A DNA stretch of 64,000 bases, from assembly GCA_964035545.1 (NCBI GenBank), contig OZ037767.1:24258628-24322627 (forward strand), in the 5' to 3' direction. The notes under the pieces were generated by a model. That model ran no database searches, was not told the origin of the DNA, and saw nothing but the letters and a program-made list of their open reading frames with translations. The stretch comes from Bugula neritina (taxonomy: Eukaryota > Animalia > Bryozoa). Numbering within the stretch: the stretch's first letter is position 1; each line of letters starts with the position of its first letter. Positions 28,150 to 56,644 of the stretch are shown in pieces. The translations under genes and the position numbers were made by a program.

Positions 28150-28370
28150 CTTACTTAGGCTTTATTATTTTTTCTACTACTACTCATACACGCAGTGTTA
28201 CAAGTTGATGGTTACTTAGAGTTGTCCTTTCACAACATCGTGTTTTGGTTTACTAGCCTAGTACCGCTGCCAATAAGCTGAGAGGTGAAAATCGAGAGTG
28301 GCGCGTGTAGTACCCGCACAGTTAATTTTTTTTGAAACCTAGAACTAACATTTCAAGATGGCAGCGCCCA
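28150..28370. promoter_or_regulatory. CpG-enriched probable (bidirectional) promoter region of PAK1IP1 / GALM-like gene; YY1-like CAAGATGGCAGC over the ATG
   Basis: Local CpG cluster (gtggcgcgtgtagtacccgc); head-to-head gene arrangement. Confidence 0.4.
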
Positions 28371-31300
28371 TGAAGAGTCACGTTCCAGTAGAGGGCCTCA
28401 AAGTTGAACTTGTTATCGGATCATACTACCAAGTCTTGTATGGGTACGAGTTGAAAGAATCAAATAACAAGGTAGAACTTGATGTTTCGTTTACTAATAA
28501 TACTCACTGCGGGTCAGTCCGATCATTGGCAGTCTCTTCAAATAAACTACTAGCATCTGGTTCAACTGATGAAAATATTCAGCTCTTCGATCTGAAATCT
28601 AGATATGAGGCTGGGACGTTAATGAAGCATAGTGGCACTATTACAGACATCGAGTTTTATAATGAGTTTATGATATCTTGTGATGATTCTGGCATTATAT
28701 GTATCTGGAAAGTGCTTGGCAAGTCGTTTGAATGTATGAAAACGCTCTCCGGTCATAAGGGATCAGTTGCAAGCCTTTCTGTTCACCCTTCTGGCAAGAT
28801 ACTGCTATCTGTTGGGCAAGACAAGACTCTGCGTACTTGGAATTTAGTAACAGCTAAACGAGCTTATACTACAAACACTCCTTCTATGATAGACATTGTG
28901 CGTTGGTCTCCTGATGGGGAAAAATACATTCTTTGCTACAATGGAAAAATTGATATTTGTTCTATGGCTAAAGCTGCTTCTTTACATACAATTAAGTTAC
29001 CTGGAAGAGGCCATTCTTTAGATTTTGTGTTCAGTGAAATTTTTGCTGTCGGGTGTGAAAATGGTCTGTTAGTTTTTGTGAACGTCAACTCTGGTGTAAT
29101 CATTCATGAATACAAGACTGCAAGCAACAGAATAAAATGTGTTAGTGCTCACGAGTTAGACGACTGTAAATCCCTTCTTGCTCTAGCTACAAATGATGGG
29201 GTGGTTGAATTGTTGCTAATAAGTCACAATCTTGGCAAAGTCTCTACTTCTCTTATTGCTGCTACCAAACATGATTTAAGACCCATATGCCTTCAGCTGG
29301 TTGTAAATACGTATGAGGAGGAAAATAAAGAGGACAAGCCTACATTGGTGTCTACAGTAAGTAATTTAGTGCAGTTTTTAATTTGTGTTGTACCCCTAAA
29401 TCATTCAAAATGATAAAATAGCAAGGCAAAGTTTGGCATTTTTCAAATGTGTTCAGCTAATAAAAAATTTTGCATTTTTTACCTCAAGCTATATAAAAAA
29501 AGTATGGTTAATATTACAAATGTTCATTAGAAGTGCCGAAGAATAAAACAGTGTGATATGTTTTTCAATAGAAAATTTTAATTAAGCCCAATGTTTTGTG
29601 TAGTAAGCACATACTTCTGTTTAGCACATCAAATATTAGTCTACACTATAGATATTATATCATAAGATTATCCATTACTTGTATTTTATGTTTGACTTTG
29701 TGTTGTTTTAGGGTTGTGAAAAAGCTGTTGAGAAGGAGGCTGACAAGGAGCTGGATACTTCAATAGATGATCAGAAGGATGTTGCTGTCACAGGTGAGTG
29801 AGTGGAGTTGAATATAACCTTGAACTTCAAACAATTTTATATACCTTTTTATTGGATCAGCTGTGTTATACTCTGGCAACTTTCAGAATTAAGTTAAGGT
29901 AGAGAAAACGCTTGTTAGTTTTTCTATACTGTAGTGAATTAATGACATCTATAATTTTTATACATTTAAAACAATTTTTTATATGCAAATTGGTAGGTAA
30001 AATCCTTAACTTGTTGAATAATTTTTGTACCTGCTAATGACAATAATTTAAGTTCAAAATTAGTACTTACCCTTAAAATATTAAATTGTAATTATATATT
30101 AATGTCACAACTGTTACTTATAATATAATGTCATCTGTTTTATGTTAGTTAAATAGCATGCTAATAGCACTTTCCTTAAGATACTGACAAAATGCAGTAT
30201 GAACAGAAAGCTGAAAATAGCAACATGTGTATAGTTGGTTAACAGAGCACATCAAAATGTATAATTCATTAAACTGAATGTTCACCTAGAAGTATGTGCA
30301 CTGTGCTTTCATCAATATTTGTAAAAAGAACTTGGGGAGTTATCTTTTTCAGGTGTTCTAAAACCGCCCACTTATAAAATGGTGCAACATAAACTTAATA
30401 TAGATTTATAATGTATTAAAGGTATTTTTTGTGTTCCATAGTGCACATGTTGGAGTCTAATTTATTATGTATGAACATTATTATAACACTGTCACTGCTA
30501 TATTTATGCTCTGATTTTATTTTCACCAATTTAATGTTATCTCCTTATTTATTTCATTATAACTATTATCAATTGCTATGACTTATATTATAAATAAAAA
30601 TTAGGTTTATTATATTAATAATATATATTATTGTGTTGAGTTTCCGCACTTATTCTAGTATCCACGCTGACTTTGGAACTGCAGCAACCTTCACCTTTTC
30701 CTTTTTTTAGTTTCAAACTCAACGTACATTGCTCCCTCTATATCTCACTAAGCTTTGGGTTCAAAACCTCACTTTGTGACAGTAGAATATCATATTCAAC
30801 TCACGGATCCGTTAAATTCCTGTTAAATATTCTTATACACACATGATGTGTAAGCTACAAGACAGGGTCCAAGCCCTTCTCGTGACTTATGGAATTTTGT
30901 GAGAACCATGAGATACGGAGGGAGCATTGTATATGATTCTATGTTGACTACTGTCCCAGTGCTTGAGGGGTGCTGCATTTACTGGTGTCTTATATATCTT
31001 TCTTAGCACTCTTGTCAATTCCTGCCACTTCTCCATCCTCCACTTTACTTTGTTCTGAACTCTCTGGCTATCCTATTTTATGACATCCTATTGGCTAACC
31101 AAGTGTAGTCTCCTCTCACCTTGCTAGCCTGCCTCTACTAAACAACTCCACTGGGTTCTCCAACGCTCTTTGTGGTTTTAGCAGTGGTGTGTGTAGTGTA
31201 GTGGGTTACAATTTTGATTATATTTCAGACAGTATTTTATTATTGCAGTATTACTGGCCCTCACTCTACTTAATTGTTGATATTCTATTATATGTTATCT

Positions 31301-50954: not shown

Positions 50955-52002
50955 CCCCAGAATCCTATATTTCCAATGCTCCTCACAGCAAAGCCATTTA
51001 CAAATATTTAAATGCTACAGAAACTCTATAATAAAAATAAAGTTGGTAGGCTACTAAAGTGGAAAAATGCCATAATGCGGTTTTTAGCCGTGGAACTAAT
51101 AAAATAGTTACTGTTTTCAAATATCATATTTTAGAAATTAGCTTTGGTTATCCTTAGCAAAGAGTTTTACTGTTTTAAATTAATAATATACATAAACATT
51201 TCTTACTGTCTTTATGGCTAAATACTCTTTCAAATGCATTGTATTTCTATATTGTATTCATTATATATAGTCACTGGCTATGGTAAGTGTTATAAATGCA
51301 TATTGTGACACTTGATTGCCTTTTCCCGTACTCTGTATTTATGTACTTCCACGACAGCTTTGTACTTCTATATTTTTGTAATATGATATGAGTATATTTT
51401 TATACATATAATATACTAGCAGTTCAAGTTACAATTGATTTTTTCTGGTGTACATCAATAAGAAATAAAACTAGTCTTTCTTTAAATAAAACTAAACAAA
51501 ATATAGGTTAGATAGCTTTAAACTAACTTTGATTAATTTTGGCCTGCAGTGCCCCAACATGACCTATATGGAATCTTGTGTGAAAGAAATCTGTAAGCTA
51601 TGAAGGAAAGGAGTGTACTAGATACGCCACAATCATATTACATTAGAGTGGTATGACAAATCTTCATGAAAGTGTTGTCCAAGTGCGAGTGTTTTTTAAA
51701 TTTTCTTAAGTTGCCAATGTCAATTACTAGTTATCTGAAAAAATCTACCTTCCCCTCAATATCTCCACCTTCTTTATATGAACAATAACATTTCAATTGC
51801 ACTTCACTATTAGTTATCATAAATTTAATGAAACTGAATAATAATATTATATACAGTATAATATTTACAATGTATTATAACAACGTGAGATGTGGCATGT
51901 GCAATATTTTTGAAGGATGGCCGTGCAGCTATAATGTGTGCATATATACTAGTATGTTACGAGTTTCCTTTCACTCAGCTCTCTGAAATTATCATTCGCA
52001 TT

Positions 52003-52010
52003 TGACGTCA
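52003..52010. promoter_or_regulatory. Perfect CRE palindrome TGACGTCA upstream of the secreted precursor gene
   Basis: Consensus CREB/ATF site about 370 bp before the ATG, followed by TATA-like CATAAAA at about 52038. Confidence 0.4.
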
Positions 52011-52375
52011 CTTTCACTCACCATGTGCTAATTTTCCCATAAAAGATAAAATGAAAACCGATTAATGCTCAAACAAGAGGATTGAAATAATTAAAAATAA
52101 TTCTTCACAATTTACCAGTTTTTAATAAACAACTCCAAATTTGCTTCAACTTTTTGTATTAAATGTTACAAACTTTAGTATAAATCAGTTCTCAATGTGA
52201 CATTTCAATATTATAATATAACAATAAGTATATCAATATGTCTATGTAATTGTAAATTCATCAACAACACCCCCCTAGCTCCCCCTATTATGTCTTCATC
52301 TCACAAGTGGTCACATCATTATAGTTATAGGGTTGTGGCAGCTGATATGCAACTAGTTAATTCTTAAAGAGCAAC

Positions 52376-54503
52376 ATGGAAGGTAAAATACTGCTCACAT
52401 CTTTGGTCCTTCTGTATTCATGTGTCTCCTTATCAACTTCTTGTGGACCTTTCGGCAAAAGACTTCTGTTGCAAGTTGGGGTAAGTTTCCAAAATGGTGA
52501 ACATGTTGCATTAACTATGGCATAATTATTGTCATCTGTGTAAGACAATCCACCATAATGAGGGCATACGTATGTATGCCTATCATTTATATCTTTTCTT
52601 CAGAATACACGCTTTCAACATATATTATAAGACTAATAGTGCCACAATATGTATCCCATAATGATGAAAATGTTATTTGTATATTACTAGTGTGGTGATG
52701 TAGTAGTAGTAGTGGTAGTAGTGGTAGTAGTGGTAGTAGTGGTAGTAGTGGTAGTAGTGGTAGTAGTGGTAGTAGTGGTAGTAGTGGTAGTAGTGGTAGT
52801 AGTGGTAGTAGTGGTAGTAGTGGTAGTAGTGGTAGTAGTGGTAGTAGTGGTAGTAGTGGTAGTAGTGGTAGTAGTGGTAGTAGTGGTAGTAGTGGTAGTA
52901 GTGGTAGTAGTGGTAGTAGTGGTAGTAGTGGTAGTAGTGGTAGTAGTGGTAGTAGTGGTAGTAGTGGTAGTAGTGGTAGTAGTGGTAGTAGTGGTAGTAG
53001 TGGTAGTAGTGGTAGTAGTGGTAGTAGTGGTAGTAGTGGTAGTAGTGGTAGTAGTGGTAGTAGTGGTAGTAGTGGTAGTAGTGGTAGTAGTGGTAGTAGT
53101 GGTAGTAGTGGTAGTAGTGGTAGTGGTAATGGTAGTGGTAGTGGTAGTGGTAGTGGTGGTGGTAGTGGTAGTGGCAGTGGTAGTGGTAGTGGCGGTGGTA
53201 GTGGTAGTGGTAGTGGTAGTGGTAGTAGTAGTATATAATTATTTTGTTAGTTATGATTATAGTGAATGCATTTGTGGTGTTGAGAGTAGCCAGTAGCCCC
53301 TGTGGTGTAATGATTAGCACACTTGCTTACAAGCCGGAGGTATGAGATTCAAATCAAAATGTTTTACGGCATATCACATACTTGCACCAAATTTCACTTT
53401 TGATTAATGAATGACATTAATGACTAGTTTTATTGCAATGATAAGTATTTACTAAATACGAACTGAAATAATTATATAATGTTCTTTAGGAACAATGTGG
53501 CAGCAAGCGCTGTCTTTTCTGGGAGAGTTGTGTGAACGGGAAATGTACAGATGAAAAGCCAATTTTTCATGATTTGCTGATGAGCAAAAGACAATTTGGC
53601 ATTTGTGTAGAGGTGAGTCGTGAGATATTCGGTAGGGCAAATAATGTGAATGCATTTGCCTGCATTTACATTATTTGTGTCAGGCATTTATATGCTAAGT
53701 GTCGAATTACAGGTAAAATACCTATGTATATAAATATATATATATCATATGTGTGTGTAATAGATAAAGTTGTTACCAATTGTTTTATTTGTCCGTTAAA
53801 TAAAGAAAGCATACATGGTCAAGTTTTTCTTTAGCCCTTTTTTGTTTTAATATATCTCTCATAACCTATTTCTGATTCATGCTAGAGTAGATTTCTTTGG
53901 GTTCGTTATGTGACACCAAGTGATAAATTAATTTTCAAACTTTTCATTTGCCTAAATTTAGTTGAAACTGAATAATAATATATGAAAGATTTGATATAAA
54001 AACTGTTTTATTTGTTCTTGCTTATTTTAATTTGTGTTTTGAAGTAAATTCTAAATATAATATATTAAGTAACTCTGTCAAATGTACAGAATGTAATATT
54101 CTATTATGTATCATTATATTACATTATATAACTATTAGGAAAAACTTCCTCCTCTTAAACTATTTCATAATTTGCTTGATAGGTACTTTTTTCCTTGAAT
54201 AAAGCCTAGTTCTGTTGCAAGTATCAAAAAAATATATTTTTAAAAAAATTCTTTCTCAACTATTTCAGTATTACATTCTGCATGATAATGATTAATTTAT
54301 TTTAGGAATGTTCATCTCATAGTGACTGCAAGTTTGGGAAGTGTGTCAGCAATGGCTGTGGTCATGTCTGTTCAAACTTTGGGAAAAGAACTCCTTGCAT
54401 AACACAGGGTGCTCCCTGTAGGTGCTTCTGTTTCCATGGTTACAAAGAGGATGCTAATGGCTGCAAGCTGTGCGAGTGCAAAGCTGCTCCTAAAGGAAGT
54501 TAA
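52376..54503 (+). CDS. Secreted Cys-rich prepropolypeptide, 141 aa: signal peptide, KR-separated modules, WAP-derived and antistasin-type domains
   Basis: Exons 52376-52480, 53490-53612, 54306-54503, two phase-0 GT-AG introns, AATAAA at 54565. Translation MEGKILLTSLVLLYSCVSLSTSCGPFGKRLLLQVGEQCGSKRCLFWESCVNGKCTDEKPIFHDLLMSKRQFGICVEECSSHSDCKFGKCVSNGCGHVCSNFGKRTPCITQGAPCRCFCFHGYKEDANGCKLCECKAAPKGS*. Confidence 0.88.
52700..53232. repeat. (GTAGTAGTG)n then (GTAGTG)n microsatellite, about 530 bp, in intron 1 of the precursor gene
   Basis: Direct; source of the poly-Val and His/Tyr ORFs. Confidence 0.97.
53296..53355 (+). mobile_element. tRNA-like (Val-like) SINE head or tRNA pseudogene fragment
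   Basis: A-box-like TGGTGTAATGATTAGCAC, loop CTTACAA, B-box-like GATTCAAATC; no 3' acceptor stem. Confidence 0.5.
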
Positions 54504-56644
54504 TATTATGTAGTATATATACTATATTACTGACTTTTGCAACTGCAAGTTAAATATGATTGAAAATAAATTTTACAAGTCAACACGGCTGTTGCTTTTA
54601 CAATTAATGTGTTTTTCAAGAAAAAAAACTTTACAATACATAATATTATGCATACTCTTAACGTATGTTATAATATAGCCTATTTTGGGCTGTACTTTGT
54701 GCAGGAGACTTTAACCTTGTCTAAATAATATATTGGTCATATTTCTGATATAACTCTAAGTTATGTTATAACAAATATGTTACATATAAACAAGCAAGGC
54801 ATCAACTTACAATAGCATAACACAACAATGCATAGACAAAAAGTATATGATATAAGAACAGGCAAAATGTATAAGTTTGTTTCCTTGACTGAAGCTCACA
54901 GTGTAACTCTTCAACTGGCTGCTAAAATTTTTACTTTTTGTTAAAGGTGATGTTCAAACACAACAAGATTTTAGCAATGAAGTCCAATAAAGCAGAAAAA
55001 AACACAAAAACCCATTTTTCATATCTTAAATAACTAACTTTGTTCAAATTACACTAACCTCTCATAGGATGTTATTATTCCAGATGCGGCAGAATAAAAG
55101 CAGTCTAATCTAAGAGACAGCTAATAGAACGGCTATAAGCTAGCTTTATAAACATACCATAATCATGACACACATTCAAATAAACTACTATAAAAGATCC
55201 AAAAATAAAAGTTTATGAAATTATTGTTTCTGCTTATATTTATAGTCAGCTGGTACTATCTGTTGCATGTGTTGGTATGTTTGTGCCTATAATTTTAAAA
55301 CAAGAAGGAAATAAACTAATGGATCACGTTTCTTATATCTATTTCGCAACAAGATATTTTACATTGTCATTAATAATAATTGACACTACATGTAATGTAG
55401 TTGAATGAATATATGATACTTATATATCCAGATTAGCCTTATACTTAAGGACGGCTAAATATTTTCCCATTAGGCAGTTTTGCATATTTTATGTTAGCAA
55501 CAATATTGCTCAATTTATTTAACAGCATAGTTATGATCTATTTCAAAATATTTCATATTCCATATGCTACTTTAAACCAACTGCTTAAAAAAACTGGTTT
55601 TATGGGTTTTTCTCATCCATTAGCTTGTTTGCTGGTCAGTTAAACCATCAGCAACATAGTTTTAGAGGGATCGTTCTTTATGCAGTGGAAACCCCAGCTA
55701 GGCTTTGTCTGTAATTTGAATGTGTCTAGTTTGCCCTGGATTGGCTTATTTACCTTTCTACAATATATAATCTTAATGACTATGGGAACTATATGATACA
55801 TACATGTTTGTTGAATTATTTGATAATCAGTCTGCTACGTTGTGTGACTAAGCAATGAAATAATATTTATTTCAGTTTCAAACTGGATATTAAAAACTCC
55901 AAAGAGAAATATGTCGAGTCATAAAATACATACAAACATAATATATATAGCATGGGGTCTATAGATAACGTGGTCTAATGATATTTTTATGCTATTCAGC
56001 AACCACAGGCATTTTTCTACTGCTTTGTGATGCTGAACATGAGGTATATTGGATAAGTAACGTCAAATTTGACCTTTAATATTAGTCTGTTAAGAACGTC
56101 ACATTGTACAATAAATAAAACATGACTAAGTTTGAACGAATGGATACACGTTGGATTTAGTGTGGTTACCATGGTAGCATTCGTGCTGTCTGTTGATGTT
56201 TGATGAATGATCACATGACATACACGTGGTCCGGAGAAGCGTTCAACCGCGACCTCAAGTAGCCACTGCTCAGCACGCACATGTTCTTATTACTAAGTCA
56301 TAAGTGAGTTCTATGGACTGGTGTACCAACGTAAGTATGCTTCAGTTTCTCTTTTTTGCTGGAATTCTTCAGGTTTTTTGCTTAAATTAATTACATTTTA
56401 GTAATAATCAACATAATTAGCAGTGAAATACTATAAATGTGTAAACCTCAGTTTGGCCCTACTTGTAGCCTTTGTAGGCTTTCAAGTTTTAACTCGAGTT
56501 TCAAAAGCAAGTACTTTGCAAATCTATAACGATGGACACGAACCTTATTTAATACAGAAATCCTGCAAAATAGTTAAATATAGATTTGTTTGCACCTTGC
56601 TCAAGCATTGGAACTTGGCTTAATACTTAGGAATTACTCTACTG

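What the first reader, a model, noticed from the sequence alone, without database searches (positions are those of the whole stretch)
52376..54503. Hidden prohormone-like polyprotein that packages several different disulfide-rich peptides
Seen: three phase-0 exons splice to a 141-aa ORF not assembled in the ORF track: signal peptide | CGPF-GKR | LLLQVGEQCGSKRCLFWESCVNGKCTDEKPIFHDLLMS-KR | QFGICVEEC...CSNF-GKR | TPC...CECKAAPKGS. Three KR sites (52457, 53586, 54384) fall exactly at module boundaries, and two are F-G-K-R. Established: KR is the prohormone-convertase site, G-KR yields C-terminal amidation by PAM, and an N-terminal Gln cyclises to pyroGlu. Inference: one gene uses neuropeptide-style processing to release a mix of an F-amide peptide, a 4-Cys peptide, a WAP-type peptide and an antistasin-type protease inhibitor, plausibly a defence, antimicrobial or toxin secretion. 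I do not recognise this architecture from a described gene.
Basis: partly seen in the sequence, partly recalled or inferred. Interest (0 to 1): 0.9.

Follow-up and report, generated by a model that had tools for sequence, protein, structure and literature searches.

The report
Secreted WAP-antistasin inhibitor precursor gene
This is a real three-exon animal gene for a small secreted protein of the known WAP-plus-antistasin protease-inhibitor family; its pieces are separated by Lys-Arg sites that relatives suggest are cut, so it is an interesting variant rather than a new kind of gene.

Summary
The three-exon, 141-codon model holds as sequence: ATG, two GT-AG phase-0 introns, a stop and AATAAA. 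A contig from a probable RNA run joins exon 1 to exon 2. Junction 2/3 has no read support, but it recreates the family's WAP consensus and sits where a relative has its intron.

The protein belongs to the known WAP-like + antistasin inhibitor family. Antistasin passes Pfam's cut-off. The nearest relatives are echinoderm 'antistasin/WAP-like serine protease inhibitors' and ~100-aa mollusc proteins.

- A fourth KR lies inside the 4-Cys module.
- 'CGPF' is the first-cysteine segment of the WAP domain. A 1,129-bp insertion carrying intron 1 and a haemadin-like knot split it from the rest.
- The second FGKR is a 6-residue insertion that two relatives lack.

Cleavage is not shown. In 47 small invertebrate relatives, dibasic pairs sit almost only in pro-regions and linkers (53 observed, 11 expected; 1 inside modules). 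They are often followed by Gln or preceded by Gly.

Best reading (~0.55): a convertase-processed inhibitor precursor, a new variant of a known kind. The scan has unchecked notes on other antistasin/WAP-like clusters in this genome.

The parts
52376..52480 (+). Exon 1 (35 codons): start codon, signal-peptide-like region, then C-G-P-F-G-K-R and six more residues.
   Evidence: An X1 contig joins its 3' end to exon 2. The N-terminal exons of three relatives align with it.
52376..52441 (+). Predicted signal peptide (22 residues). Cleavage is inferred to fall just before Cys23.
   Evidence: The 11-residue hydropathy maximum is 2.2, and 2.9-3.0 in relatives. Small residues at -3/-1 before the invariant Ser-Cys occur in all four genes. 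This is a heuristic; SignalP was not available.
52442..52462 (+). C-G-P-F-G-K-R: WAP cysteine 1 followed by the first F-G-K-R.
   Evidence: S-C-x-x-F-G-[KR]-R is invariant in the window gene, L004, L009 and L002. In L004 this cysteine lies 10 residues before the G-I-C cysteine, the spacing seen in canonical WAP repeats of P0002.
52463..53591 (+). A 1,129-bp segment absent from the relative L004. It holds the last 18 nt of exon 1, intron 1 and the first 102 nt of exon 2, and is bounded by a 9-nt direct repeat.
   Evidence: L004 reads F-G-K-R directly followed by x-F-G-I-C-V-E. The direct repeat is family D2 at 52455-52463 and 53584-53592.
52481..53489 (+). Intron 1 (gt...ag). It contains a microsatellite at 52700-53233 and a dispersed ~90-bp repeat at about 53270-53361.
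   Evidence: The X1 contig skips it.
53490..53612 (+). Exon 2 (41 codons): 4-Cys module, linker, K-R, and the start of the WAP-like module.
   Evidence: It is a single copy in the genome.
53496..53546 (+). 4-Cys module (C-x4-C-x5-C-x4-C) that resembles haemadin. It contains an internal K-R at 53505-53510.
   Evidence: Pfam Haemadin scores 20.4 bits, below the cut-off of 25. PDB 1e0f_I residues 20-43 match at E 0.015. Atlas scores of 0.81 or less are not informative.
53586..53591 (+). K-R directly before Gln-Phe-Gly-Ile-Cys, the candidate convertase site that would expose an N-terminal Gln.
   Evidence: The same [KR]R-Q-x-G-x-C arrangement occurs in Haliotis, Aplysia, Elysia, Plakobranchus, Biomphalaria and other proteins.
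53592..53612 (+). First part of the 6-Cys WAP-like module (Q-F-G-I-C-V-E).
   Evidence: It aligns with the end of L004 exon 1 and with the WAP consensus of relatives.
53613..54305 (+). Intron 2 (gt...ag, phase 0), between the two Glu of V-E-E-C.
   Evidence: L004 has an intron at the same position. There is no read support for the junction.
54306..54503 (+). Exon 3 (65 codons plus stop): the rest of the WAP-like module, G-K-R, and the antistasin module.
54306..54380 (+). Second part of the WAP-like module (five cysteines, S-N-G-C-G-H-x-C signature), ending in Phe.
   Evidence: phmmer stretches 1-24 and 2-62 fall on WAP repeats of relatives. The equivalent stretch of relative P0092 passes Pfam WAP at 24.1 bits against 20.8.
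54372..54389 (+). S-N-F-G-K-R: a six-residue insertion relative to L004 and L002, the second F-G-K-R.
   Evidence: Alignment A4. It lies in the lower-confidence linker of the AlphaFold model, with pLDDT 64-65 against 80-83 on either side.
54390..54479 (+). Antistasin-type module with seven cysteines. C-R-C-F-C is aligned to the hirustasin C-R-I-R-C reactive-site stretch.
   Evidence: Pfam PF02822 scores 23.6 bits against 21.2. PDB antistasin matches at E 7.9e-4, with bdellastasin, hirustasin and guamerin alignments. The top Foldseek rows are the same proteins but are not significant.
54565..54570 (+). AATAAA polyadenylation signal, 62 nt after the stop codon.

Best explanation
The locus is a functional three-exon gene. 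It encodes a 141-residue secreted, cysteine-rich precursor of the WAP-like + antistasin serine-protease-inhibitor family.

After signal-peptide removal the protein starts with WAP cysteine 1. A haemadin-like 4-Cys knot has been inserted into the first WAP loop. A 6-Cys WAP-like core and an antistasin-type module with Arg at the predicted P1 position follow.

The Lys-Arg pairs at the module borders are most likely cut by secretory-pathway proprotein convertases, as appears to be a trait of the small invertebrate members of this family. That would release a 6-Cys WAP-like peptide that could carry pyroGlu and amide ends, the 4-Cys piece, and the antistasin inhibitor. The short N-terminal Cys peptide probably stays disulfide-linked to the antistasin piece.

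Shown here: the gene structure, family membership, the exon 1/2 splice, and the family-wide concentration of dibasic sites at borders. Inferred: cleavage, capping, disulfide pairing, and a protease-inhibitor or defence role.
For: Gene model. Spliced exon 1/2 contig and mostly synonymous variant differences.

Family membership:
- Pfam Antistasin is above the cut-off.
- phmmer gives E 2.7e-43 to a 19-repeat starfish protein, and the whole of exon 3 (residues 2-62) matches single WAP+antistasin units.
- Source names include 'antistasin/WAP-like serine protease inhibitor' of Stichopus.
- PDB antistasin, bdellastasin and hirustasin alignments.

Processing:
- In 47 small relatives, [KR]R occurs at 1 of 2,937 positions inside Cys modules against 53 of 1,529 in pro-regions and linkers.
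- Shuffling within those regions gives 11.1 +/- 3.0 against 53 observed. [KR]R-Gln is 25 observed against 1.0, and Gly-[KR]R is 11 against 1.0.
- Haliotis, Lymnaea, Bulinus, Biomphalaria and Physella proteins have G-K-R right after the last WAP cysteine.
- The TARA contig protein P0075 has three KR-flanked WAP-like repeats.
- S-C-x-x-F-G-[KR]-R is invariant in four clade genes.
- S-N-F-G-K-R is a discrete insertion at the border and lies in a lower-confidence linker.
Against: - No peptide or protein data exist. Cleavage, amidation and pyroGlu are all inferred.
- KR at 54384 is missing in L004 and L002 and in the exon-2 translation of L009.
- A fourth KR sits inside a disulfide loop. If all KR were cut, the 4-Cys module would be nicked.
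- Cysteines are odd in number in the N-terminal piece (1) and the antistasin piece (7), so clean release of four separate peptides is unlikely.
- The residues after two of the sites are Leu and Thr-Pro, which from my own knowledge are less favoured after convertase sites.
- Junction 2/3 has no RNA support, and one X1 contig retains intron sequence.
- The family statistics use related sequences, so the p-values overstate independence.
Confidence: 0.55

Rival explanations
1. It is an ordinary multi-domain inhibitor that stays in one piece. The KR pairs are linker residues without a processing role, or at most a pro-peptide is removed at one site. The protein acts as an intact WAP-like/antistasin protease inhibitor in mucus, matrix or immunity.
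For: Large echinoderm and Lottia WAP-antistasin proteins lack dibasic linkers, and the Lottia proteins run at their intact mass. KR at 54384 is not conserved in the nearest relatives. The odd cysteine counts per piece favour an intact or tethered molecule. An internal KR lies in the 4-Cys loop.
Against: The strong, position-specific excess of [KR]R, [KR]R-Gln and Gly-[KR]R at borders in small relatives is hard to explain by composition. F-G-[KR]-R is invariant after the signal peptide in four diverged genes.
Confidence: 0.3
2. It is a true signalling-peptide (neuropeptide or hormone) precursor. The conserved product is the short amidated N-terminal peptide (Cys-Gly-x-Phe-amide), and the Cys-rich modules are carrier or co-released peptides.
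For: C-[GN]-x-F-G-[KR]-R is the best-conserved stretch among four otherwise 27-34% identical N-terminal exons. Gly-Lys-Arg is the classical amidation signal (established knowledge).
Against: The cysteine is WAP cysteine 1 by spacing. It co-occurs with an extra antistasin cysteine in all four genes, which suggests a structural disulfide. No such peptide family is known to me. No expression site is known.
Confidence: 0.07
3. The model is not a working gene. It could be a decaying copy, or the exon 2/3 join could be wrong.
For: No read support for junction 2/3. An X1 contig retains intron 2 sequence and diverges 9 nt before the stop. No identical protein is in the collections.
Against: The frame is open through all three exons with canonical splice sites. 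The junction recreates the family consensus. The intron position is shared with L004. Five of six variant differences are synonymous.
Confidence: 0.05

Closest known systems
Antistasin/WAP-like serine protease inhibitors (Stichopus monotuberculatus AOY33895; starfish 'prestalk protein-like'; Lottia shell-matrix and Patella mucus WAP+antistasin proteins)
   Same: Both combine WAP-type and antistasin-type modules in a secreted protein. Exon 3 matches whole WAP+antistasin units at 42-45% identity.
   Different: Those proteins are long arrays (300-1,100 residues) of full 8-Cys WAP domains without dibasic linkers. The window protein has a single unit with a degenerate WAP (cysteine 6 lost), KR-bounded modules and an inserted 4-Cys knot.
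Small (~90-235 aa) mollusc proteins with 6-Cys WAP-like + antistasin modules (Haliotis, Aplysia 'antistasin', Lymnaea, Biomphalaria 'ghilanten-like', Littorina, bivalves), annotated automatically only
   Same: Signal peptide, a [KR]R (often followed by Gln) just before the x-G-x-C-V-E-x-C start of a 6-Cys WAP-like core, frequent G-K-R after that core, then an antistasin module.
   Different: They have no cysteine in the pro-region, no extra cysteine in the antistasin module and no 4-Cys insert. I found no paper describing their processing.
Pacifastin-family inhibitor precursors of insects
   Same: They work alike in concept: one secreted precursor with several disulfide-rich inhibitor domains separated by dibasic sites, compared by the authors to endocrine peptide precursors (PMC5691223).
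   Different: The fold and family are unrelated. No pacifastin domain is present, and here the modules are of different kinds.
Leech antistasin-type inhibitors (hirustasin, bdellastasin, guamerin, antistasin) and haemadin
   Same: The C-terminal module aligns with their reactive-site half, including Arg after the second cysteine. The exon 2 knot resembles haemadin residues 20-43 and, from my own knowledge, has the C-x4-C-x5-C-x4-C spacing of the hirustasin N-terminal subdomain.
   Different: In the leech proteins the two subdomains are contiguous. Here a WAP-like core separates them, the P1' position is a cysteine, and the haemadin match is below Pfam's cut-off.

Membership tests
Antistasin family (Pfam PF02822) | Profile match above the curated gathering score | tested here: met
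   23.6 bits against a cut-off of 21.2, exon 3 residues 37-58.
Antistasin family (Pfam PF02822) | Six-cysteine pattern of the reactive-site subdomain, with a basic P1 after the second cysteine | tested here: met
   All six cysteines align with antistasin, bdellastasin and hirustasin, and Arg aligns with the hirustasin reactive-site Arg. One extra cysteine sits at the P1' position.
Antistasin family (Pfam PF02822) | Serine-protease inhibition | not testable with these tools
   Needs a recombinant protein assay.
WAP four-disulfide core (Pfam PF00095) | Eight cysteines forming four disulfides | tested here: not met
   Seven are present. Cysteine 6 (the second of the C-C pair) is replaced, and cysteine 1 is separated from the core by a 38-residue insert.
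WAP four-disulfide core (Pfam PF00095) | Profile match above the gathering score | tested here: inconclusive
   Neither exon alone gave a WAP hit at E up to 10. The domain is split by intron 2 and the joined model was not searched. The equivalent exon of relative P0092 passes at 24.1 against 20.8.
WAP four-disulfide core (Pfam PF00095) | Core signature x-G-x-C-x-E-x-C ... S-N-G-C-G-H-x-C | tested here: met
   Alignments A1, A2 and A5.
Haemadin / leech antihaemostatic motif (Pfam PF09065) | Profile match above the gathering score | tested here: not met
   20.4 bits against a cut-off of 25. PDB 1e0f_I matches at E 0.015 over 23 residues. This is a resemblance only.
Convertase-processed peptide precursor (prohormone-like) | Signal peptide | tested here: inconclusive
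   A hydrophobic core and the -3/-1 pattern are conserved in four genes. No dedicated predictor was available.
Convertase-processed peptide precursor (prohormone-like) | Dibasic sites at module borders that are conserved in relatives | tested here: inconclusive
   Site 52457 is conserved in 4 of 4 clade genes. Site 53586 corresponds to the family-wide [KR]R before the WAP core. Site 54384 is absent in clade relatives but paralleled by G-K-R in gastropods. A fourth KR lies inside a module.
Convertase-processed peptide precursor (prohormone-like) | Observed cleavage products, amidation and pyroGlu | not testable with these tools
   Needs peptidomics.
Pacifastin-type multi-inhibitor precursor | Pacifastin domain (PF05375) | tested here: not met
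   No such hit on any exon. The likeness is in mode of processing only.

The most novel reading that the evidence does not exclude
Small invertebrate 'WAP/antistasin inhibitor' genes may in fact be a widespread, undescribed class of convertase-processed precursors. They would yield pyroGlu- and amide-capped three-disulfide peptides plus an antistasin inhibitor. This lineage would show how such precursors grow: a haemadin-like knot was captured between duplicated KR sites inside the WAP loop, a six-residue F-G-K-R cassette was inserted at the next border, and a conserved Cys-Gly-x-Phe-amide piece stays tethered next to the inhibitor's reactive site.
Probability: 0.25. Interest if true: 0.7.

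Novelty: new variant of a known kind. Interest (0 to 1): 0.45.

Why it matters
If the KR borders are really cut, a family now annotated automatically as 'antistasin', 'ghilanten-like' or 'WFDC3-like' inhibitors would be a source of capped, disulfide-rich secreted peptides in molluscs and other marine invertebrates. That bears on innate defence, mucus and matrix protection, and peptide discovery. The window gene would be a clear example of a precursor gaining modules and cleavage cassettes by small insertions. If they are not cut, it is one more small protease inhibitor with an unusual nested domain.

Tried and rejected
- Joined model: not searched, folded or run through signal-peptide or cleavage predictors. 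All searches were made exon by exon by reference.
- Read laying was given 53240-54620 only, to stay clear of the long microsatellite. The exon 1/2 junction therefore rests on a loose end. The oligo-dT RNA run X2 laid nothing, X13 is DNA, and no joint was reported.
- The search for related loci with exon 3 alone found nothing in metagenomes. With alignment A4 it found only L007 and L008 (the same gene as L004) and L009.
- A profile search with A4 found only P0092 and an ordinary WAP protein, so the clade has no annotated orthologue.
- The Atlas search of exon 2 scored 0.81 or less against mixed EGF, Dumpy and hirudin clusters, which is not informative.
- Foldseek on the exon 3 model ranked hirustasin, bdellastasin, guamerin and antistasin first, but at E 0.7-8. 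The VIA wide search gave no Z of 2 or more.
- The AlphaFold model of Haliotis P0140 was poor (mean pLDDT 65). It shows only that the pro-region and linkers are the weakest parts.
- No tRNA or Rfam family was found in 52000-55000 (tRNA) or 52300-54700 (Rfam).
- A paper search for a family motif, and for processing of antistasin or WAP precursors, found no description. One search term was malformed.
- I tried to name the organism through the intronless WD40 ORF, but it is not in the collection. The species remains unknown to me.
- I rejected the idea that KR is the WAP inhibitory P1. From my own knowledge, the elafin-type binding loop follows cysteine 2, and here only three residues separate cysteines 2 and 3.
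I redid the step with pattern logic and references.
Full report
**What is in the sequence**

The window is AT-rich animal DNA (about 33% G+C) from a 216-Mb assembly. At 52376 an ATG opens a 35-codon exon that ends in a gtaagt donor. A 41-codon exon runs from 53490 to 53612 (acceptor ag, donor gtgagt). A 65-codon exon from 54306 ends with TAA at 54501-54503, and AATAAA follows at 54565-54570. Both introns are phase 0.

Everything below rests on exon-by-exon references.

**Is it expressed and spliced as proposed?**

I laid four runs on 53240-54620 and left the long intron 1 microsatellite out.

- Run X13 is plainly DNA. It covers the introns and is identical to the window.
- Run X1 (RNA by guess) holds a 197-nt contig. 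Its last 44 letters lie on 53489-53532. Its other 153 letters end in a sequence that matches the 3' end of exon 1 with three synonymous changes. This supports junction 52480/53490 in a ~95-97% identical variant.
- Another X1 contig covers exon 3 but also 36 nt of intron 2, and it diverges 9 nt before the stop.
- No contig shows junction 53612/54306, and the oligo-dT run X2 laid nothing.

Indirect support for junction 2/3 is strong:

- The splice recreates the family consensus G-x-C-x-E-E-C-S-x-D-x-D-C.
- A relative's gene has its intron at the same point.
- The variant's listed exon 3 differences are two synonymous and one Lys-to-Arg.

**What family is it?**

- Exon 3 passes Pfam Antistasin (23.6 bits, cut-off 21.2). 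Exon 2 gives a sub-threshold Haemadin match (20.4 against 25).
- An exhaustive phmmer search with exon 3 found 131 proteins. The best is a 1,132-residue starfish protein at E 2.7e-43 with 19 matched stretches.
- Residues 2-62 of the exon match single repeat units there.
- Source names include 'antistasin/WAP-like serine protease inhibitor' of the sea cucumber Stichopus, and 'antistasin-like' proteins of crinoids and starfish.
- Papers describe WAP+antistasin proteins in limpet shell matrix and pedal mucus.
- PDB searches align the C-terminal module with antistasin (E 7.9e-4), bdellastasin, hirustasin and guamerin. Arg falls after the second cysteine, opposite the hirustasin C-R-I-R-C stretch.
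- The AlphaFold model of exon 3 has two confident halves and a weaker linker. Foldseek ranks the same leech inhibitors first, without significance.

The architecture is therefore not undescribed.

**Anatomy, from the nearest relatives**

The genome holds one weak paralogue (L002). Metagenome contigs hold two relatives, L004 (the same gene as L007 and L008) and L009.

All four genes start with a hydrophobic signal-like region followed by an invariant Ser-Cys-x-x-Phe-Gly-[Lys/Arg]-Arg.

In L004 this is followed at once by x-Phe-Gly-Ile-Cys-Val-Glu and the splice. There the first cysteine lies ten residues before the next, the spacing of cysteines 1 and 2 in canonical WAP repeats such as those of P0002. 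So 'CGPF' is the first-cysteine segment of the WAP domain, not an independent module.

In the window gene, 1,129 bp separate this segment from the rest of the WAP core. That stretch holds six codons, intron 1, and the 4-Cys knot with its linker and second KR. It is bounded by a 9-nt direct repeat. I read this as an insertion into the first WAP loop that duplicated the KR codons.

The knot resembles haemadin residues 20-43 (E 0.015). From my own knowledge, it has the cysteine spacing of the N-terminal subdomain of hirustasin. The match is weak, and the Atlas search was uninformative.

The WAP core has lost cysteine 6. From my own knowledge of WAP disulfides (1-6, 2-7, 3-5, 4-8), the remaining six core cysteines can pair among themselves and cysteine 1 is left over.

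All four clade genes also carry an extra cysteine in the antistasin module (C-R-C-x-C). I saw no cysteine at that position in the mollusc relatives listed, which also lack cysteine 1. I therefore infer a disulfide between the N-terminal cysteine and the residue next to the predicted P1 Arg. This is inference only.

Finally, the second F-G-K-R is part of a six-residue insertion relative to L004 and L002.

**Are the KR sites processing sites?**

Nothing here can show cleavage, but the comparison is telling. Profile searches recovered many ~90-235-residue mollusc proteins, and one TARA eukaryote contig, with 6-Cys WAP-like cores and an antistasin module.

In 47 such proteins:

| Measure | Observed | Comparison |
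|---|---|---|
| [KR]R inside cysteine modules | 1 of 2,937 dipeptide positions | odds ratio 105 against pro-regions and linkers |
| [KR]R in pro-regions and linkers | 53 of 1,529 positions | 11.1 +/- 3.0 after shuffling within those regions |
| [KR]R-Gln | 25 | 1.0 after shuffling |
| Gly-[KR]R | 11 | 1.0 after shuffling |

Typical arrangements:

- Signal peptide, a few residues, KR or RR, then Gln-x-Gly-x-Cys.
- G-K-R three to six residues after the last WAP cysteine.
- The TARA protein has three KR-flanked WAP-like repeats.
- Bradybaena uses Lys-Lys at the same borders.

Vertebrate 6-Cys WAP repeats in the same hit lists have none of this. The sequences are related, so the statistics overstate independence. 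Still, the pattern spans gastropods and bivalves.

By established knowledge, Lys-Arg is the convertase site, Gly before it is the amidation donor, and an exposed Gln cyclises.

Evidence against it in this gene:

- Site 54384 is not shared with the clade relatives.
- The internal KR sits in a disulfide loop.
- Cysteine counts are odd in two of the four proposed peptides.
- Leu and Thr-Pro follow two of the sites.

**Verdict**

- Best reading (about 0.55): a secreted WAP-like/antistasin inhibitor precursor that convertases cut at some or all module borders. The N-terminal Cys peptide is probably tethered rather than free.
- Main rival (0.3): an uncut small inhibitor.
- Other rivals: a true neuropeptide precursor (0.07) and a non-functional model (0.05). 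Both are unlikely.

The gene is a new variant of a known kind. The domain pair is known, and dibasic-processed multi-inhibitor precursors are known for pacifastins.

I found three things undescribed in the papers I could search: the nested 4-Cys insert, the inserted F-G-K-R cassette, and the family-wide KR-Gln / Gly-KR borders.

Other first-stage notes of the scan report further antistasin/WAP-like gene clusters in this genome. I checked only that the genome has at least 15 antistasin-domain matches.

Noticed in passing
window 52700-53233: A microsatellite of 29.5 copies with an 18-bp period (GTAGTG-type) fills half of intron 1. It creates long spurious ORFs on both strands.
   Followed up: yes
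window about 53270-53361: A ~90-bp dispersed repeat in intron 1 has at least 48 copies at 80-88% identity across the genome, and very high depth in the runs. Loose ends of contigs continue into tRNA-like sequence, but ARAGORN and Rfam find nothing here. It is probably a SINE fragment.
   Followed up: partly
window 52455-52463 and 53584-53592: A 9-nt direct repeat exactly bounds the 1,129-bp segment that the relative L004 lacks. It may be a footprint of the insertion that brought in intron 1 and the 4-Cys module. Another chance 9-mer repeat occurs in the same 1.2 kb.
   Followed up: partly
L002 (G000:C3:22966017-22969154, minus strand; exon 1 at L002:1902-2009, exon 2 at L002:1507-1641): The only paralogue in the genome has the same N-terminal S-C-x-x-F-G-R-R and C-R-C-L-C. 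It lacks WAP cysteine 2 and has an extra phase-1 intron inside the antistasin module, an intron that L004 and L009 share and the window gene lacks.
   Followed up: partly
proteins P0135, P0140, P0249-P0260, P0075 and others: Small mollusc WAP-like/antistasin proteins, named only by automatic annotation, carry [KR]R-Gln and Gly-[KR]R at nearly every module border. Some are clear multi-copy precursors (Haliotis, Bradybaena, a TARA contig). I found no paper on this.
   Followed up: partly
window 54251-54491 in run X1 (record 3): A variant contig carries 40 extra letters and a short duplication in intron 2, then leaves the window sequence 9 nt before the stop codon with the frame still open. It may be a structural allele or an assembly chimera.
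   Followed up: no
window 28358-29413: An intronless 351-codon WD40-repeat ORF. The exact protein is not in the 15-billion-protein collection.
   Followed up: partly
G000:C3:28.75 Mb, C3:29.49 Mb, C3:32.16 Mb, C4:16.76-16.77 Mb: The genome has at least 15 antistasin-domain matches above Pfam's cut-off, several in tight clusters. This agrees with other first-stage notes on antistasin/WAP-like gene clusters.
   Followed up: no
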